A stretch of 64,000 nucleotides of DNA, taken from positions 44,491,810 to 44,555,809 of the forward strand of contig NC_052152.1 in the NCBI RefSeq assembly GCF_902713615.1. The letters are read 5' to 3'. The position numbers and the translations under genes were made by a program. The notes under the pieces were generated by a model. That model was not told the DNA's origin. It made no database searches and was given only the letters and a program-made list of their open reading frames with translations. Every line of letters starts with the position of its first letter. The first letter of the stretch is position 1. Of the stretch, positions 25,917-51,222 are shown piece by piece. Source of the DNA: Scyliorhinus canicula (taxonomy: Eukaryota).

Positions 25917-26979
25917 CTTTTTCTTGCATTTTTGAATATTCCTGATAATTTCTCAACTATTTTTAAATAAATATGTATTCATTAAAAATGCGTTGTCTAT
26001 ATCTTTGTTACTTTGTTAGCCAAGTTCAAAGCCAAGGTGTTGAAACAATGGATGGAATTAGAACTAATGCTTAAAGCTTTTATTGTGGCTAAATACTTAT
26101 TAGGAACTCTAAATATTTATTTTTTAAATTCTCAATGCTGAAGTCATTTACTTAACACTATATTGTATTTAGCCAACTTAAAGTTTTGAGGACTTTGGAT
26201 AAATTATGCTTTGCCTACCAACCCAAGTGCTTTACTTTGTCACAAGAAAAGTGAGCCTAAAATGTGCAAGGTAACATCTAAAAACCTATTCTCAGACAAT
26301 TTCACTGAAAGATATACAATCTCACTGAAGTAAATGAATTCAATTACTAGCTAGAAAAATGTTTACAATTGAAAAAATCTTGTTTCTATGCATTTATAAT
26401 ATTTACATTGTTCTTTATCTGTATAATTGTTTTCATACTCGACCATTCCAAAAATGTCTGTTCAGATTCGGATTCAATTGATTTTTCATAAAGGGATTGA
26501 AATCCCTAATTCTGCTTTGATGTCATCTCTTTACTTTTTACACTGTTAGAAACTGTTTATCTTGTAAAACACCTGTTTACATTTAGATATATTTGTTTCT
26601 TATATTTTAATATTTTCAGTTCCAGTATAGCATAGCATTTTATTATGACCGCCTATGCAAAAATGCAACAAAAAATGTAACTTCCAAACATTCGTGTAGG
26701 CTTAGCCTATCTTTTCCACGTTACCTGAAAAGCTTCAACCAACACAATATGACCCACAGAGGCAAGTCAGCTTGCAGGTGCTGGCACAGTTATTGTAAAG
26801 TACTTTTACAATATATTTTTTTAAGATAATGTAAAAAAAAAAATTTTAAATAGGTTTTGTTGGTAAATAATATTGTTGGGAACAATTTCCAGATTAGCAA
26901 TAACGTTCTGCTGGTCGAATTGAGTTAATCTGAAAGGCTTTCCACTCTTGGTTGTCCTTGCAATAACAATCTCAGAATC
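25890..26979 (-). other. CD247: CD247 3'UTR (about 1.1 kb; end inferred)
   Basis: Follows the stop codon, is free of transposons and carries several ATTTA motifs. The end is inferred from AATAAA at 25916-25911. Confidence 0.6.
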
Positions 26980-27063
26980 TCAGCGACGAGGATGTGGAGG
27001 CACGGTTGGTAATTGCTGCATTTGCAGTTGGTCATATGTGTCTTGTGTAGCTGCACTCAGTCC
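26980..27063 (-). CDS. CD247: CD247 exon 8 coding part, GLSAATQDTYDQLQMQQLPTVPPHPRR* (completes ITAM3)
   Basis: Acceptor gctaacaatttaatgcaattatttttag| with a ctaac branch point. Matches human [21 protein letters not shown]. TGA stop at 26982-26980. Confidence 0.97.
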   Translation of the reverse strand, partial: GLSAATQDTYDQLQMQQLPTVPPHPRR

Positions 27064-27139
27064 CTAAAAATAATTGCATTAAATTGTTAGCTGATTGGGT
27101 GTATCAAAAAGAAATACTTTCATATTAATGTCCACAATG

Positions 27140-27818
27140 TTCATGTCCACAGATCTCTGAAGGTTGCCACTCAAGTGGATAGAGCCATGAAGAAGGCTTA
27201 TCGTGTGTTAGCGTTTATTAACAGGGGGCTTGAGTTTAAGAGCTGCGGGGTTATGCTGCAACTATATATGACCCTGGTGAGATCACATTTGGAGTATTGT
27301 GTGCAGTTCTGGCCACCTCATTATAGGAAGGATGTGGAAGCACTGGAAAGGGTGCAAAGGAGATTTACCAGGATGCTGCCTGGTTTGCAGGATAGGTATT
27401 ATGAGGAAAGGTTGAGGGAGCTAGGGCTTTTCTCTTTGGAGCGGAGGAGGATGAGAGGTGACTTAATAGAGGTTTATAAGATGATGAGGGGGATAGATAG
27501 AGTGGACGTTCAGAGACTATTTCATCGGGTGGATGTAGCTGTTACAAGGGGGCATAAGTATAAGATTCAGAGTGGGAGATATAGGAGGGATATCCGAGGT
27601 AGGTTCTTTACTCAAGAGAGTGGTTAGGGTGTGCAATGGACTGCCTGCTGTGATAGTGGAGTCGCACACTTTAGGAACTTTCAAGTGGTTATTGGATAGG
27701 CACGTGGAGCACACCAGAATGACAGGGAGTGGATAGCTTGATCTTGGTTTCGGACAATGCTCGGCACAACATAGAGGGCCGAAGGGCCTGTTCTGTGCTG
27801 TACTGTTTTATGTTCTAT
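27140..27818 (+). mobile_element. Young 5'-truncated CR1 LINE (HER1-like) in CD247 intron 7
   Basis: Nearly intact RT C-terminus (ORF 27175-27627, LVRSHLEYCVQFWPPHYRKDVEALERVQRRFTRMLPG). Its tail gctcggcacaac...gggccgaagggcctgttctgtgctgtactg is shared with the HE1 SINEs. Confidence 0.9.
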
Positions 27819-29562
27819 TAAATTATTTTTCACTGCAGGGATAATCCATTGATGCCCTGTAGGAAACTCAGGCTTGCAGAGAATGTTGGTCAGAGATAAC
27901 TACAGGTGTATAGCCCTGATTTTCCACCAGACAATTCCTACAGGGGCATATCACACCACCATGAGCACAGGATTACAAAACGTTACTTTGTTTAAGGAGT
28001 TTCTAATTTTAATTCTTAATATTGGGCTGGATTACAAAGTTTTCCAATTCAATTCACTGTGGAGCAAGTATGTGAAGAATGTAGTGTAAAGTGCGTAAGT
28101 CAGGAATTTGGTGAGAATCAGAATTCGGTGCAGAACGAGAAGCTGATCAATTGCTTCTAATAGATTGATTTATGTAAGCTTCCCGCAGCAAGTATTTAAA
28201 GATTTTGGCCAGTGTTGAAGTTAAATGCTTAATGCACGTTAGTCTGTAGACAAAGAAACGACTTAACAACAAACTAAAAAGCGAAATATAAATAATCTGT
28301 CAAGAAATAGCAGAGCATGTTGTGTGTCTGTGGTAGTTTGTGGACAGCAAGACTGTCCCAAGTGAACATGTCTGCAGCAGATGTCTCTATCTCTAATCTG
28401 CAGCTCCAGCTCAACACATACAGAACAGTCGGCAAGAGATCAGGTTTGGCGATTGCCAGGAGCTAATTTGAAGAATAGAACCTTAAAGGGTTATAAACCC
28501 TGGATTATTACCCGAGACACATGCAAATTGGCATTGAGGCAAGTATATTGGGGAGGCGAACACCTGATTTAAGGAGTGGTGTGAGAAAGAATATTTCCAT
28601 TTCATGGGACGCTGGCACCAGTACTGGGACAGTAAGGGAGCACTATGCTGGGTTCCACTTGCAACAGGCTGGCACCAGAGTCCAAACAAAAAGAATAGAT
28701 TAGGCAGGTGCAAGGATTTAAACTAGTAAATGTGCCGGGGGTGGGGCTTGGGCAAAGGTGTTAGAGACAGCACAAATAATTGTTCAAAACCAATCAAAAG
28801 TGTAAAGAGTAGAGTAACCTTGGAAATTTATGTTTTAGGCACTACAGTTAAAAGAAAAACTAACTGATGTAAACTGTTTAAACCAGAAGAGACAAATCAG
28901 AAATAGAGGTGAAACAAAACATTAGAACAGAAGCACAAGTTAGGGTATATGGCCCAAGTAAACATTCTTGTACAAATATTTGGCCAAAAGGAACACACTG
29001 AGTGAATTGCAGTTGCAAGGACTATATTATTCATGCAAAACAGTAAGATCCTAGTATATTTTGTTTCCAACCATAAGGTCTATGGGGAAGGCAGGATAAA
29101 CAAGCTGGGGGTGAGTAGCCTTGGTGATTAAGGATGAAAATATTTCAAGTAAGAGGATCTATCAAGTGATAAGCAAACAGAGGAGACTGGACAATATTAA
29201 GAAATTGAAAGGGATTTAACACTGTAATGGGAGTTGTTTATAGGCCCCGTGGTAGCTGCTGTAAATTAATAGATTGTGTAAATACAGACATTACACGAAC
29301 GTATAGTCACGGCTAAGTGGTTTTAATGGGAGATGTAACTCATACAGACTGAATAAACAATAGCACATGACAGAAAAATGGTGAGTTTTGTGTGTGTCTG
29401 GGATAGCTTTCTGTAACAATAAGGGGCAGGCTAAATTAGATTTTGCATTGAGTCACATTTAATTAATAGCCTAATAGTGCATGAACATTTGTCTAATAGT
29501 AAACAGAACATGGTGGGGCTCAACATAGTTTTTGAAAGGGAGAAACACAAAACAGTTACTAA

Positions 29563-30445
29563 GGGCGCTATCTACCAGCCTCCCAGTGGCAGTGTTTAAC
29601 ACTGGTTTCCACAACCGTGGAGCAGGCATACAGCACTTGGGGGGAAGGAGGGTGTCCCAGGTAATTGGGGCCTCTGGACAGGCTGTTTCTCCCAATGCCA
29701 CCTGGGCACTGTGGCCCTGCCAACCTGGCACCCTTGCAGTGTCACCTGGGCACCCTGGTGATGGCAAACTGGGCAGAGCCAAGGTACCCAGAAGGCATCT
29801 TGCTCAGGACGGAGATTGGGCGGTGGGGTGTGGAGGACTCTCAGAGTCCCTAATTAGTATATTGGGCATTGCGGGAGTCCAGAGGCCGGGAAATCAGGGT
29901 GTCATCTCCTGCACTGACGGAGCCTTAAGTGTAGCCTTGCCGAGGCCCAGTTAATAATGGGGTCGTTCTTGGTGTTCCAAGCACCTTGCTAAATACACCC
30001 AAAACGGGGCTTTTTTTTTCCATTCGATCTCTCTCACTCTAAAGGTGCGATCCAATGGCTATGCTGTGCCTAAAAAGCAGCTTGCCACGGCATAGCCGAT
30101 GAAAGGTGTGGGGTGCCCTGCATGAGTGTTGGGGCAGTGCCGGAGGGACCAGGGAACCTCCCGTACTGCATTCTGGGGGTGGGTCGGGGGTCGCTTCAGG
30201 TGCCTCAGAGATCAGGGTGCCATTTTTAAATGGTGTCCCGATCTCTTGCTACACCGGAGAGTTCTGGTGAATGGAGCTCTCCAGTACACATGTGCGGCCT
30301 CGGCTGTGCAATCCCCACTGAGGGTCTGTATACAATGCGATTCGCATTCTGCAGACATGTATTTCATGGTGCTACGAGCGTCAGGGAACACGTGGCTAAA
30401 CGCACTTGCTGTGGGACTCTGTTCCTAATTAGTTGAATTGAGCCC
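29563..30445. mobile_element. PIF/Harbinger-like MITE or two abutting MITEs
   Basis: TAA TSD at 29560-29562 and 30446-30448. Imperfect terminal inverted repeats (TIRs) GGGCGCTATC / GGGCTCAATT. Internal TIR-like ends at about 30020-30060. Confidence 0.65.
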
Positions 30446-31021
30446 TAAGGTACAGGTGAGGTGACTTTCATGGAATGTGACTGACACTCCACGGACAATG
30501 GGCAAATCCAAAACAGGTTAAATGACAAGATAACAGATGTTTTAAATCAGAACCAGTTCATTCCTGAAGAGACAGGTGCTCTATCTGCAAAAGAAAACAC
30601 AGCCATGGCAACTAAAGATAAAGAGACAACATAAAACTAAAAAAGCATGCAAAAGTACAAAAGCAAAGCGTAGACCCTGACCAATTGAAAAGACACAAAG
30701 AACAGGAAAGGATGAAACCACATATTGAGCTATAAAAAGAGTATAATATAAAAACCTTGCAATGGATACCAAAATCAACACAAAAATATTTTAGTGATGT
30801 TCAAAAGATAATTTCTTGAAAATTGATGTGATATTTTCAATAAAAATATGGTAATGGTGGACACACTGAATAATTAGATGGTGGACACACTGAATAATTA
30901 CTTTGCATCGATATTAACAGTTGAAAAAGAGGTCAGCGTACCAGACATTCAAAAAAAAATCCAAGATTGAATCAGATATTAAACAAAATTAATGTAAACT
31001 AACAATAATGTAGGAAATAAT

Positions 31022-31692
31022 GGGCTGCATTTAACAAAACGGTGTACTTCTCACACCTGCCTCGGAAAGAAAGTTGATCGGCAGCGGCCAATAAGCCCGC
31101 CACGCAACCATAACATGCTGGAGAGGGACTAAACTAGCTAAGAGTGGGACTTCTGCCCCTCATTGGGAAGAAGTCCCGCCTTTGAGAGCTGTGGTCGGAA
31201 GCTCTTGCATTCCTGGCAGCCCCAGGGCTCCGTAGTGGCCGCTGGCAGGACTACAGGAAAGAGTGTAATGATAACTGCAGATCAGTAAGTCCTGGGCTTT
31301 TAGTGTGGGGATGGATCCGAGACCCCAGGGATCTGGGTTTTGGAAGGCAGATGGTGATGGTGGGGATGTTCCTGATGCATACCCCTCCCCAAATGAGATG
31401 TCCCCTTTCCTGCCGTTTTTCATCAAAGCCACAAAAAACAGCCTGCACGTTCCCGCCCATGCCAACTGCATTATGGTGTGGGCAACATAAGCCCGTGAAT
31501 AGGCAAATTAATCTTTGATTAATCATGTAAATATAGTAGGCAGATGACCAATTTTGGCACTAACTCATTAGTGTATTCTGGGGGTCAGTTTGGGGGTGGG
31601 CAAGAGATCGTGGGCTAGCCGCATAATATATTATGAGGCCACCCACCATGCAACTGAAATCACATCCAGCAGGGGGCTGTAGAATCCAGCCC
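31022..31692. mobile_element. Harbinger-like MITE
   Basis: TIRs GGGCTGCATT / GGGCTGGATT (reverse complement of aatccagccc). Interrupts the old CR1 RT. Confidence 0.6.
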
Positions 31693-32607
31693 AAATGCCA
31701 GGTACAGATGGTTTCCATCCCAGAGTTTTAAAGGAAGTGAGGAAATTGCAGATGTCCTAATTATACCAAAGTTTCATTGATTTAGGAAATGTTACTTTAG
31801 GTTGGAAAATTGTGCATGTCACTCTCCTTTTTTCAGAAAGGCGAGAGAGAAATCAGTAAAATATAGACCAGTTGGCCTAACATCTGATATTCGGTAATTA
31901 CTAACATACACAATGAAGGATAGGTAGGGTAACTGACCGCCTTGAAAATGTTCAGTTCATCAAAATGAACCAGTATGGATATGTGCAAAATGGTTGATGC
32001 CTGCCAAAACTGATTAAATATTGTGAAGAGGTGACTGAAGGAGTGAAGCAGGAGAGTGTCCATGTGCATTAGTTATATGTATTTCCAGAAGGCATGTGAG
32101 AAAGTCCCTCATACAGACATGGCTGAAGTTGTAACTCATGAAATTGGTTATTGAAGATCCAAAGAAACTTGGAAACCAGCTACATGGGTCATCATTTATT
32201 GTGCCTGTTCATGATATTTTTTATCATAAAGGCTAATAGAATACTGGCATCTAGAGGACTGGAATAAAAGGAGGTGGAAGTCCTGTTTCAGCTATTGCAA
32301 CGTCCTGCTTAGACCATATCTAAAGTACTGTGAGCAATTCCGAGCACCATATATTAGAAATAATATATTGAATGAGGTTAAAGACATTGGGAGTTGCAAT
32401 GTTCGAGAGAAATTTGAAAATGAGAATTTTTAAATTGAGGTATCGCTTAACCAGGAACCAGTGTAGCACAAGGGTGATTGATGAATGGGGCACAGTGCAT
32501 GTTAGTTAAGTTTCCACTAGGTGGAAGATGAGAGGGCAGCCTAATGGCTTATTTATCAATTGTATGTCTTCTTCTGAAGGCAGCAACTCTATTAATTTAT
32601 TTCCTAC

Positions 32608-32643
32608 CTGGTAAATATCATTCCCTCCTTTGCCTCTTCGCTT
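32608..32643 (-). CDS. CD247: CD247 exon 7, KRRGKGGNDIYQ (basic stretch and first Tyr of ITAM3)
   Basis: Acceptor tgtttttcttcctgaacag| and donor CAG|gtagga. 36 nt like human exon 7 (RRRGKGHDGLYQ). Confidence 0.95.
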
Positions 32644-32929
32644 CTGTTCAGGAAGAAAAACATACAAATTATTCCTAAAGTGCATATTTATCAGTTTCAC
32701 GGCTAAATCTCTGCTAAATTTCACATGAACACACTTGAGGATAGATTGTCCAAAGTTTTTGCTCACATGTGACAACTTGCATCTTATGAACATCTACCAG
32801 AAAATCAGAATGAGGTACAGACAAGGTCCTTGAATAATTTACCCTTTGTGGTTTTCACTGAATCCTAAAAGCGCAGAAAGCCGTTCTACCCATAATGTCT
32901 GCATCGGGTCTCCAAATGAGCAATTCACA

Positions 32930-34479: not shown

Positions 34480-34536
34480 CTGCTGAGTTGGTTTGAGTTC
34501 ACCATAAGGCTCACTTCTGTTCTTGGGATTCAGTTT
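34480..34536 (-). CDS. CD247: CD247 exon 6, KLNPKNRSEPYGELKPTQQ (completes ITAM2)
   Basis: Acceptor atttattttgtttgcag| and donor CAG|gtatga. 57 nt, the same length as human exon 6. Gives YSKL-x8-YGEL. Confidence 0.93.
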
Positions 34537-36246: not shown

Positions 36247-36288
36247 GGAGTAGGTGTCATTATGAGCCGCATCATCTCTCCTTTGGTT
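36247..36288 (-). CDS. CD247: CD247 exon 5, NQRRDDAAHNDTYS (first Tyr of ITAM2)
   Basis: Acceptor tttatttatttttctcttaacag| and donor TCC|gtaagt. 42 nt, phase 0-0. Positional homolog of human QRRKNPQEGLYN. Confidence 0.92.
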
Positions 36289-40388: not shown

Positions 40389-40478
40389 CCTTTTTGCTCC
40401 AATTCCAGCCTCTGTGTCTTGGTTCCTGTTCTTCAACCTGAGGTGCGAATAGTCATCTTGATCTTTCTTCTGCAAGGG
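40389..40478 (-). CDS. CD247: CD247 exon 4, PLQKKDQDDYSHLRLKNRNQDTEAGIGAKR (completes ITAM1)
   Basis: Acceptor cttctatcatttttgcag| and donor AGG|gtatgt. 90 nt, phase 0-0. Completes YQPL-x7-YSHL. Confidence 0.92.
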
Positions 40479-48156: not shown

Positions 48157-48225
48157 TTGATATTGGTCTTCTACCTGCATTTGGTTTGCAGGAACATCTT
48201 CATTTTTACCTTTTACTTTGGAGAA
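48157..48225 (-). CDS. CD247: CD247 exon 3, FSKVKGKNEDVPANQMQVEDQYQ (first Tyr of ITAM1)
   Basis: Polypyrimidine acceptor ttctttttcattttgttctcaaag| and donor CAA|gtaagc. 69 nt, phase 0-0. Begins FS like human exon 3 and ends one codon after the ITAM Tyr. Confidence 0.92.
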
Positions 48226-51118: not shown

Positions 51119-51222
51119 CCTCAGTTTGAGGTAGAGAGCGGTGATTATAATCCCATACACAAAGAGAATTCCATCGAGAATATAACACAATCTAGGGTCA
51201 CTCAGCTCCATAACTTCCGCAT
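51119..51222 (-). CDS. CD247: CD247 (CD3 zeta) exon 2: short ectodomain plus transmembrane helix, (D)[34 protein letters not shown]
   Basis: Acceptor ...gccatttcgacag| and donor AGG|gtaagt. Length 104 nt, phase 1 to 0, the same length and phase as human exon 2. The [16 protein letters not shown] motif closely matches human DPKLCYLLDGILFIYG, including the dimerisation Cys and TM Asp. Confidence 0.97.

What the first reader, a model, noticed from the sequence alone, without database searches (positions are those of the whole stretch)
26980..27015. Proline-rich C-terminal extension on zeta (LPTVPPHPRR), a possible SH3 docking site
Seen: the tail after ITAM3 reads QMQQLPTVPPHPRR*, against HMQALPPR* in human. 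It contains PxxP (PTVP) and a class II SH3 consensus PxxPxR (PPHPRR). Established: in mammals the TCR complex recruits Nck through the proline-rich sequence of CD3-epsilon. I recall a report that catshark CD3-epsilon lacks that sequence; this is from memory and needs verifying. Inference: sharks may carry the SH3-recruiting function on the zeta tail instead, which would be a different wiring of TCR signalling.
Basis: partly seen in the sequence, partly recalled or inferred. Interest (0 to 1): 0.7.

Follow-up and report, generated by a model that had tools for sequence, protein, structure and literature searches.

The report
Conserved proline-rich end of shark CD3-zeta
The last coding exon of the small-spotted catshark T-cell receptor zeta chain (CD247) ends in a proline/arginine-rich tail that is expressed and kept across sharks and rays, and it is a longer form of a short PLPPR ending found in nearly all jawed vertebrates; it fits an SH3-docking consensus, but no binding has been shown and the proposed link to a missing CD3-epsilon motif could not be checked.

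Summary
On the minus strand, 27063..26983 encodes GLSAATQDTYDQLQMQQLPTVPPHPRR, followed by TGA. This is exon 8 of CD247. Exons 2-8 in the window are 100% identical to NCBI's Scyliorhinus canicula CD3 zeta isoform X1. RNA contigs from three runs splice exon 7 to this exon.

The tail is not a catshark oddity. All 14 elasmobranch zeta chains recovered end in a near-identical 12-14-residue tail (consensus QMQPLPAVPPPPRR). Mean pairwise identity is 0.80, like ITAM3 (0.82) and well above the two loose linkers (0.57-0.59). Proline codons vary at third positions.

A strict class II SH3 consensus, PxxPx[R/K], is present in 13 of 14 elasmobranchs. It is absent from the chimaera and from all 12 bony vertebrates sampled, most of which end in MQPLPPR. 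The tail is therefore an elasmobranch elaboration of an ancestral proline ending, not a new appendage.

The rewiring idea stays untested. The tail lacks the PxxDY signature that Nck SH3.1 reads on CD3-epsilon. No shark CD3-epsilon sequence could be reached, and the 2017 catshark paper is not held. There are no binding data. Modest interest. The scan also holds this same stretch as s1-253680.

The parts
26983..27063 (-). CD247 exon 8, coding part: second half of ITAM3 (YDQL) plus the 14-residue tail QMQQLPTVPPHPRR
   Evidence: Translation. 100% match to residues 153-179 of P0151, S. canicula CD3 zeta X1. Spliced to exon 7 in RNA contigs.
26980..26982 (-). Stop codon TGA
26983..27024 (-). The C-terminal tail after ITAM3 (codons Q166-R179 of the protein)
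   Evidence: mean pairwise identity 0.80 among 14 elasmobranchs
26983..27000 (-). PPHPRR, which fits the class II SH3 consensus PxxPx[R/K]; the final Arg is the last residue of the protein
   Evidence: the same register matches in 13 of 14 elasmobranchs (PPPPRR or PPHPRR)
26998..27009 (-). PTVP (PxxP); positions 2-3 are the variable part of the tail (AV, AA, SM, TV; deleted in Mustelus)
26651..26979 (-). Start of the 3' UTR. The covering 2088-nt contig runs about 1.27 kb beyond 26651, so the UTR probably reaches about 25.4 kb.
   Evidence: table 8, record 1 (X1); the far end is an inference from the record's coordinates
27064..32607 (-). Intron 7 (GT..AG on the minus strand). It contains a repeated LINE-like reverse-transcriptase fragment at about 27135-27830.
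   Evidence: joint 27062->32607 (cut +1) in X1, X4 and X6, ORF 27175..27627
32608..32643 (-). Exon 7: KRRGKGGNDIYQ (first half of ITAM3, split Yx|xL)
34480..34536 (-). Exon 6: KLNPKNRSEPYGELKPTQQ (second half of ITAM2)
   Evidence: the loose end in X4 at 32646 reads into this exon
36247..36288 (-). Exon 5: NQRRDDAAHNDTYS (first half of ITAM2)
40389..40478 (-). Exon 4: PLQKKDQDDYSHL... (second half of ITAM1)
48157..48225 (-). Exon 3: FSKVKGKNEDVPANQMQVEDQYQ (first half of ITAM1)
51119..51222 (-). Exon 2: short ectodomain with Cys, plus the transmembrane helix with Asp ([10 protein letters not shown]...)
   Evidence: exon 1 lies outside the window

Best explanation
This is the C-terminal end of the small-spotted catshark TCR zeta chain (CD247). 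The tail is a selectively maintained short linear motif. It is the elasmobranch form (consensus QMQPLPAVPPPPRR) of an ancestral jawed-vertebrate ending (MQPLPPR), lengthened by about six residues that add prolines and a second arginine. The most likely way it works is as follows. The unstructured end forms a polyproline-II stretch followed by Arg-Arg, just after the last ITAM tyrosine. It serves as a low-affinity docking site for a proline-recognition domain, and by consensus the best fit is a class II SH3 ligand (PxxPxR). This would add an adaptor or kinase contact to zeta independent of tyrosine phosphorylation. Shown: the sequence, its expression and splicing, orthology, conservation and motif match. 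Inferred: disorder and PPII conformation, and any binding. The partner is unknown, and Nck SH3.1 in particular is not favoured.
For: Identity: exons 2-8 match P0151 (NCBI S. canicula CD3 zeta X1) at 100%. Pfam TCR_zetazeta and ITAM are recorded for it. The best PDB hits are CD3 zeta, E = 7e-32. Expression: the exon 7-8 joint is seen in three RNA runs, and a full mRNA contig exists from another shark (L003). Constraint: the tail is present in 14 of 14 elasmobranchs. Tail identity is 0.80, against 0.57-0.59 for linkers 1 and 2 and 0.82 for ITAM3. In four species' DNA the Pro codons differ at third positions while staying Pro; for the Pro/Arg core, Chiloscyllium versus Leucoraja shows 4 synonymous and 0 non-synonymous differences, and pN/pS is below 1 in all pairs. 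A close relative's tail differs only at the two variable positions, Q17P and T20A. Motif: strict PxxPx[R/K] is found in 13 of 14 elasmobranchs, 0 of 1 chimaera and 0 of 12 bony vertebrates.
Against: No binding evidence of any kind. The whole C-terminal half of zeta (ITAM2 to the end) is highly conserved in elasmobranchs (0.82-0.93), so the tail may be carried by a broader constraint. The pN/pS counts are tiny (2-6 changes per pair) and one pair reaches 0.90. The whale shark breaks the strict consensus (PPPSRR). The key Arg is the very last residue, so a free carboxylate sits beside it, which may disfavour an acidic SH3 specificity pocket (inference). The short mammalian PLPPR ending has no SH3 partner in the papers I could search, despite decades of work on zeta.
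Confidence: 0.4

Rival explanations
1. The tail is constrained but is not a docking site. In this reading it is a stiff proline cap plus two basic residues. These would tune how ITAM3 sits on the inner leaflet or is reached by Lck and ZAP-70, or protect the C-terminus. No dedicated partner is involved.
For: Conservation is continuous with the very conserved stretch from ITAM2 to the end. Zeta and CD3-epsilon are described as binding the inner leaflet through basic-rich stretches (PMC10681901). The ancestral ending PLPPR does not meet the strict SH3 consensus yet is conserved from bichir to mammals. No SH3 partner of the zeta end was found in the literature search.
Against: This does not explain why the spacing P-x-x-P-x-R is kept in 13 of 14 elasmobranchs while the residues between vary. 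Two arginines add little to an already basic domain.
Confidence: 0.28
2. One reading: in sharks the zeta tail has taken over Nck (or equivalent SH3 adaptor) recruitment because CD3-epsilon lacks the proline-rich sequence. This would be a different wiring of the TCR.
For: The strict class II consensus is confined to elasmobranchs among the taxa sampled. The CD3-epsilon PRS core PPVPNPDYEP is present in mammals, birds, a lizard, frogs and sturgeon. These are exactly the lineages whose zeta keeps the short ending. If shark CD3-epsilon really lacks the PRS, the two features would be complementary.
Against: The premise is unverified here. Nck SH3.1 reads an uncommon PxxDY motif overlapping the ITAM tyrosine (PMC2661883), and the zeta tail has no DY. 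Complementarity would rest on a single evolutionary contrast. The chimaera tail (PLPPPPRH) is intermediate and fails the strict consensus. The CD3-epsilon PRS is dispensable for much of T-cell development in mice (cited in PMC2661883), so a need for compensation is not obvious.
Confidence: 0.1
3. The tail binds another kind of reader of proline or C-terminal arginine, for example a WW domain, EVH1/profilin, a GYF domain, or a C-terminal-Arg degron receptor controlling zeta turnover.
For: A run of 4-5 prolines followed by Arg fits several proline-recognition classes (my own knowledge, not tested). A terminal Arg, or Arg next to the end, is nearly invariant across jawed vertebrates (R178 is nearly invariant in A1). 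One shark (P0164) and some squamates end in PPxY or PxY.
Against: No specific consensus other than the class II SH3 one is kept across elasmobranchs. Turtles end in PPH and lizards in PY, so the terminal Arg is not universal. Nothing here tests any of these partners.
Confidence: 0.12
4. The tail has no function. It is a lineage-specific insertion that persists only because cartilaginous fishes evolve slowly.
For: Some positions vary (Q/P at 17, P/S at 19, A/T/S at 20, V/A/M at 21, P/H at 24). A 2-residue deletion occurred in Mustelus and P0164. pN/pS for one pair is 0.90.
Against: In the same proteins the two linkers have fallen to 0.57-0.59 identity while the tail stays at 0.80. Pro codons show synonymous turnover without loss of Pro. 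The stop codon position relative to PRR is fixed in 13 of 14 elasmobranchs.
Confidence: 0.1

Closest known systems
Mammalian and bony-vertebrate CD3 zeta (CD247) C-terminus, ...[12 protein letters not shown] / ...QMQPLPPR
   Same: Orthologous gene with the same eight-exon plan, each ITAM split Yx|xL. The last exon is the same, GLSxATxDTYDxLxMQ, followed by a Leu-Pro-Pro...Arg ending.
   Different: Elasmobranchs carry about 6 more residues (P-A/T/S-V-P-P plus a second Arg). This creates a strict PxxPx[R/K], whereas the bony-vertebrate ending has only PLPP directly followed by R.
CD3-epsilon proline-rich sequence (PRS), the Nck SH3.1 docking site
   Same: A proline-rich motif in the cytoplasmic tail of a TCR signalling subunit, next to an ITAM, able in principle to recruit an SH3 adaptor without phosphorylation.
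   Different: The PRS is RPPPVPNPDY, read as PxxDY, and lies before the first ITAM tyrosine, which it includes; phosphorylation switches it off (PMC2661883; sequences). The zeta tail lies after the second ITAM tyrosine, has no DY and ends in RR.
Canonical class II SH3 ligands (PxxPxR, for example the Sos1 sites bound by the Grb2 N-terminal SH3; recalled, not tested)
   Same: The spacing P-x-x-P-x-R with a proline-rich N-terminal flank; consensus VPPPPRR resembles Sos-type PPVPPRRR (from memory, a lead only).
   Different: Here the specificity Arg is the C-terminal residue of the protein. No affinity or structure is known.
Fc receptor gamma chain (FCER1G), the paralogue of zeta
   Same: Same transmembrane dimer module and a last exon of the form Y-x-G-L-S-x-x-x-Q-E-T-Y-E-T-L, followed by a short tail with PP (KHEKPPQ).
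   Different: One ITAM only; the tail is Lys/Glu-rich, with no PxxP and no terminal Arg.

Membership tests
CD3 zeta / CD247 (TCR_zetazeta family) | Very short ectodomain with a Cys for the disulfide-linked dimer, and a transmembrane helix carrying Asp (LCYxLDG) | tested here: met
   Exon 2 reads [27 protein letters not shown]. PF11628 is recorded for the identical protein P0151. PDB CD3 zeta hits have E = 7e-32.
CD3 zeta / CD247 (TCR_zetazeta family) | Three ITAMs in the cytoplasmic domain, each encoded by two exons | tested here: met
   YQ|PL..YSHL, YS|KL..YGEL and YQ|GL..YDQL lie on exons 3-8.
CD3 zeta / CD247 (TCR_zetazeta family) | Orthology rather than the paralogue FCER1G | tested here: met
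   100% identity to NCBI's S. canicula CD3 zeta X1. PDB zeta scores 114 bits against 43 bits for FcR gamma. In the white shark the gene lies tail-to-tail with POU2F1, its neighbour in human by my recollection.
CD3 zeta / CD247 (TCR_zetazeta family) | Expression in T cells or thymus | tested here: inconclusive
   Spliced RNA contigs exist, but their tissue is not known. Cloudy catshark and nurse shark CD3Z are highest in thymus according to PMC10768021.
Class II SH3 ligand (PxxPx[R/K]) | Sequence consensus PxxPx[R/K] | tested here: met
   PPHPRR at 27000..26983; the same register matches in 13 of 14 elasmobranchs.
Class II SH3 ligand (PxxPx[R/K]) | Evolutionary conservation of the motif positions | tested here: met
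   exceptions are Rhincodon (PPPSRR) and the chimaera (PPPPRH).
Class II SH3 ligand (PxxPx[R/K]) | Physical, proline- and arginine-dependent binding to an SH3 domain | not testable with these tools
   No shark SH3 sequence could be obtained. No wet data are available.
CD3-epsilon-type PRS (Nck SH3.1 ligand) | PxxDY: a proline motif ending in Asp-Tyr, with the Tyr being an ITAM tyrosine | tested here: not met
   The tail is ...PTVPPHPRR*, with no D-Y after the prolines, and it lies after the last ITAM tyrosine. The motif definition is from PMC2661883.

The most novel reading that the evidence does not exclude
Elasmobranch TCRs recruit an SH3 adaptor or kinase constitutively through the zeta C-terminus (PxxPxR-COOH), while their CD3-epsilon lacks the PRS that bony vertebrates use. 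The phosphorylation-independent proline switch of the TCR would then sit on a different subunit in cartilaginous fishes. The universal PLPPR ending of zeta in other vertebrates, including the zeta domain used in CAR constructs, would be a vestige or weak version of that site.
Probability: 0.1. Interest if true: 0.65.

Novelty: new variant of a known kind. Interest (0 to 1): 0.4.

Why it matters
Zeta is the main signalling chain of the T-cell receptor, and its cytoplasmic domain is the core of most CAR designs. Apart from its ITAMs and basic stretches, almost nothing is assigned to its last residues. This comparison shows that a Pro-Pro-Arg ending is kept from sharks to mammals. It also shows that sharks and rays keep a longer version, meeting a full SH3-ligand consensus, across all the shark and ray orders sampled. 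That makes a small but concrete question testable with peptides: does the zeta end bind anything? If it does, this would bear on how phosphorylation-independent steps of TCR triggering evolved. If it does not, the tail is just a conserved cap and the finding is ordinary annotation of a known gene.

Tried and rejected
1. I first took KLNPKNRSEPYGELKPTQQ for exon 5 and searched 32.7-34.5 kb in vain for the second half of ITAM2. The orthologue alignment showed it is exon 6, and the true exon 5 is at 36288..36247.

2. Pettinello et al. 2017 (catshark TCR/CD3) is not held by DOI or PMID. Six full-text searches for any statement on a shark CD3-epsilon PRS found none. Papers citing it say nothing about the PRS.

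I then searched with a profile of the four fragments found. This gave mammal, bird, lizard, frog and sturgeon CD3-epsilon but no shark. The length filter (at most 159 aa) probably excludes full-length shark proteins, so this blank says nothing.

4. Earlier scan notes hold no CD3-epsilon window for this genome.

5. The look-up of encoding contigs failed for a shorter isoform and for genes longer than 100 kb. Codon data therefore come from only four species.

6. Complex prediction was not run, because no SH3-domain sequence was available under its rules.

7. ORFs in 1-26.5 kb gave no sign of the expected POU2F1 neighbour. Synteny was not established in this window.

8. A literature search for SH3 binding to the zeta C-terminus found nothing relevant.

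Full report
**1. What is at the coordinates**

The finding lies on the minus strand. Reverse-complementing 26900-27120 shows a splice acceptor (tttttag) followed by an open frame. Translating 27063..26983 gives GLSAATQDTYDQLQMQQLPTVPPHPRR, then TGA at 26982..26980. The reported interval 26980-27015 is therefore the last eleven codons plus the stop. PTVP and PPHPRR are there as described. The tail after the last ITAM leucine is 14 residues with 4 prolines. The rest of the cytoplasmic domain has 5 prolines in 111 residues (binomial P = 0.003).

**2. The gene**

- I found the other exons by hand and then by tblastn with the orthologue. They are exon 2 (51222..51119), exon 3 (48225..48157), exon 4 (40478..40389), exon 5 (36288..36247), exon 6 (34536..34480), exon 7 (32643..32608) and exon 8 (27063..26983).
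- Exon 1 is outside the window.
- Each ITAM is cut Yx|xL by a phase-0 intron.
- A search of 1.84 billion representative proteins with exon 2 gave zeta and Fc-receptor-gamma family members. The chimaera zeta found there (P0001) then retrieved named CD3 zeta chains from 14 elasmobranchs and many bony vertebrates.
- The window's exons 2-8 are identical, residue for residue, to P0151, named by NCBI 'T-cell surface glycoprotein CD3 zeta chain isoform X1 [Scyliorhinus canicula]'.
- Pfam TCR_zetazeta and ITAM are recorded for that protein.
- The best solved-structure matches are CD3 zeta (E = 7e-32), with Fc receptor gamma far behind (E = 3e-10).
- The gene is thus the already annotated, already cloned catshark CD247.

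**3. Expression and splicing**

- Contigs from likely RNA runs were laid on 26651-32650. In two runs of the same species (two studies) and one run of a close relative, a contig joins 27063 to 32608. The skipped part starts with GT and ends with AG on the minus strand.
- One contig reads on from exon 7 into exon 6.
- The longest contig (2088 nt) continues about 1.27 kb beyond 26651, so the 3' UTR is long.
- An independent mRNA contig from another shark (L003) encodes a complete zeta with the same kind of tail.
- The tail-coding exon is therefore in mature mRNA. The tissue of these runs is not known to me. Published work reports shark CD3Z highest in thymus (PMC10768021).

**4. Is the extension conserved?**

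The tails are:

| Species | Tail |
|---|---|
| Scyliorhinus | QMQQLPTVPPHPRR |
| Carcharodon | QLQPLPAVPPPPRR |
| Heterodontus, Pristis, Narcine | QMQPLPAVPPPPRR |
| Pristiophorus, Chiloscyllium | QMQQLPAVPPPPRR |
| Heptranchias, Mobula | QMQPLSAVPPPPRR |
| Leucoraja | QMQPLPSMPPPPRR |
| Rhinoraja | QMQPLPTVPPHPRR |
| Rhincodon | QMQPLPAAPPPSRR |
| Mustelus | KMQPLPPPPPRR |
| Unnamed shark transcript (P0164) | HMQPIPPPPPRY |
| Callorhinchus (chimaera) | KMGPLPPPPRH |

- In alignment A1, mean pairwise identity among the 14 elasmobranchs is 0.80 for the tail. It is 0.82 for ITAM3, 0.88 for ITAM2 and 0.70 for ITAM1, and only 0.57 and 0.59 for the two long linkers.
- DNA of the last exon from little skate (L001), bamboo shark (L002), the unnamed shark (L003) and the window shows the proline codons changing at third positions (CCA/CCG; CCT/CCC/CCG; CCT/CCA/CCG) while remaining proline.
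- For the Pro/Arg core, bamboo shark against skate has 4 synonymous and 0 non-synonymous differences. pN/pS is below 1 in every pair: 0.31-0.90 for the tail and 0-0.65 for the core. The counts are very small, so this is supportive rather than decisive.
- The close relative seen in the reads has QMQPLPAVPPHPRR. Its two amino-acid differences from the window (27014 T>G, Gln to Pro; 27006 T>C, Thr to Ala) fall on the two most variable positions.
- The prolines therefore do not 'vary freely'. The refutation criterion is not met.

**5. The tail is not a shark invention from nothing**

- Coelacanth, bichir, sturgeon, bowfin, newts, caecilians, tuatara and mammals end in (Q/H)MQ(P/A/T)LPPR. Gar has PLPIPPR, lungfish IAPPPLPK, turtles PLPPH, and some squamates end in PxY.
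- The alignment places the elasmobranch extra residues as an insertion between PL and PPR, plus one more Arg.
- A strict scan for PxxPx[R/K] is positive in 13 of 14 elasmobranchs (not the whale shark). It is negative in the chimaera and in all 12 bony vertebrates sampled.
- The accurate description is this: an ancient Pro-Pro-Arg ending of zeta, elaborated in the elasmobranch lineage into a full class II SH3 consensus and then held across every shark and ray order sampled.
- Which state is ancestral cannot be decided, because no outgroup has zeta. The paralogue Fc receptor gamma ends in KHEKPPQ.

**6. How it most likely works**

- Shown: a conserved, expressed, proline/arginine-rich C-terminus directly after the last ITAM.
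- Inferred: it is disordered, adopts a polyproline-II conformation and is read by a proline-recognition domain. The consensus that is actually conserved is the class II SH3 one.
- I put this at about 0.4.
- The main rival (about 0.28) is that the end is constrained for a biophysical reason without a dedicated partner: a stiff cap and extra basic charge next to ITAM3, affecting membrane association or kinase access.
- Other readers (WW, EVH1/profilin, GYF, a C-terminal-arginine degron receptor) together get about 0.12. Pure drift gets about 0.1.

**7.

Three points weaken it and one keeps it alive.

- First, the site on CD3-epsilon that Nck SH3.1 reads is an uncommon PxxDY motif that includes the first ITAM tyrosine and is switched off by its phosphorylation (PMC2661883). 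The zeta tail has no Asp-Tyr and lies after the ITAM, so it is not the same kind of site.
- Second, zeta's proline ending coexists with an intact CD3-epsilon PRS. The fragments I could recover show RPPPVPNPDYEP in mammals, birds, a lizard and frogs, and APPVPNPDYEP in sturgeon.
- Third, the premise that catshark CD3-epsilon lacks the PRS could not be checked. The 2017 paper is not held, no other paper states it, and the protein search cannot see full-length shark CD3-epsilon from the short seeds available.
- What keeps the idea alive: the lineages shown here to have the PRS are exactly those with the short zeta ending, and the strict SH3 consensus on zeta is confined to elasmobranchs.
- If shark CD3-epsilon truly lacks the PRS, the two features would be complementary, although that would be one evolutionary contrast only. 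I give the full hypothesis about 0.1.

**8. Novelty and verdict**

- The gene, the protein and its sequence are known and annotated. The tail's deep conservation, its relation to the universal PLPPR ending and its SH3-consensus status in elasmobranchs are not described in any paper I could search. I could not read the one paper most likely to have shown the alignment.
- I class it as a new variant of a known kind.
- Interest is 0.4: a tidy, testable small question about a very well-studied molecule, not a surprise.
- The same stretch is also on record in this scan as s1-253680.

Noticed in passing
window 40389-40478 and 48157-48225 (minus strand): ITAM1 of catshark zeta reads YQPLQKKDQDDYSHL. 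From memory this is the YQPL...YSHL pattern of CD3 gamma/delta rather than the mammalian zeta ITAM1 (YNEL...YDVL). Sharks mostly keep YQPL, while rays have YE(P/A/R)L. This is already flagged as s1-253776.
   Followed up: partly
window 27135-27830 (intron 7; ORF 27175..27627 on the plus strand): A fragment resembling the C-terminal part of a LINE reverse transcriptase. RNA contigs pile up on it at very high summed depth with many variant letters in all four runs, including other species, so it is an abundant, transcribed repeat family.
   Followed up: no
window 32643-32649 and 34480-34485 (exon 6/7 junction): Exon 6 ends CAGCAG and the exon 7 acceptor is aaCAG|AAG. Orthologues differ by one residue exactly here (QQ-KRR in most, QQQKRR in Mustelus, QQPKRR in Rhincodon and Chiloscyllium). 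This junction may be a hot spot for a one-codon indel or alternative acceptor. From memory, mammalian zeta also has a one-Gln splice variant.
   Followed up: no
window 26983-27009; P0163: The skate Rhinoraja longicauda and the catshark share the exact ending PTVPPHPRR. Their nearer relatives have PSMPPPPRR (Leucoraja) and PAVPPHPRR (the catshark's close relative). The same two substitutions (Ala/Ser to Thr, Pro to His) seem to have arisen in parallel, which suggests few alternatives are tolerated at these positions.
   Followed up: partly
P0216-P0219, P0310-P0313 (CD3-epsilon fragments from other vertebrates): The CD3-epsilon PRS core PPVPNPDYEP is identical from mammals to birds, a lizard, frogs and a sturgeon. 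It therefore predates the split of ray-finned and lobe-finned fishes.
   Followed up: partly
locus of P0154 (white shark): In the white shark, CD247 spans about 138 kb and its 3' part overlaps POU2F1 on the opposite strand in the annotation. No POU2F1-like ORF was seen in window 1-26500.
   Followed up: partly
window above 51222: Exon 1 (signal peptide MKFKWICATICLVTEFHLA) is not within the window, so intron 1 is longer than 12.7 kb.
   Followed up: yes
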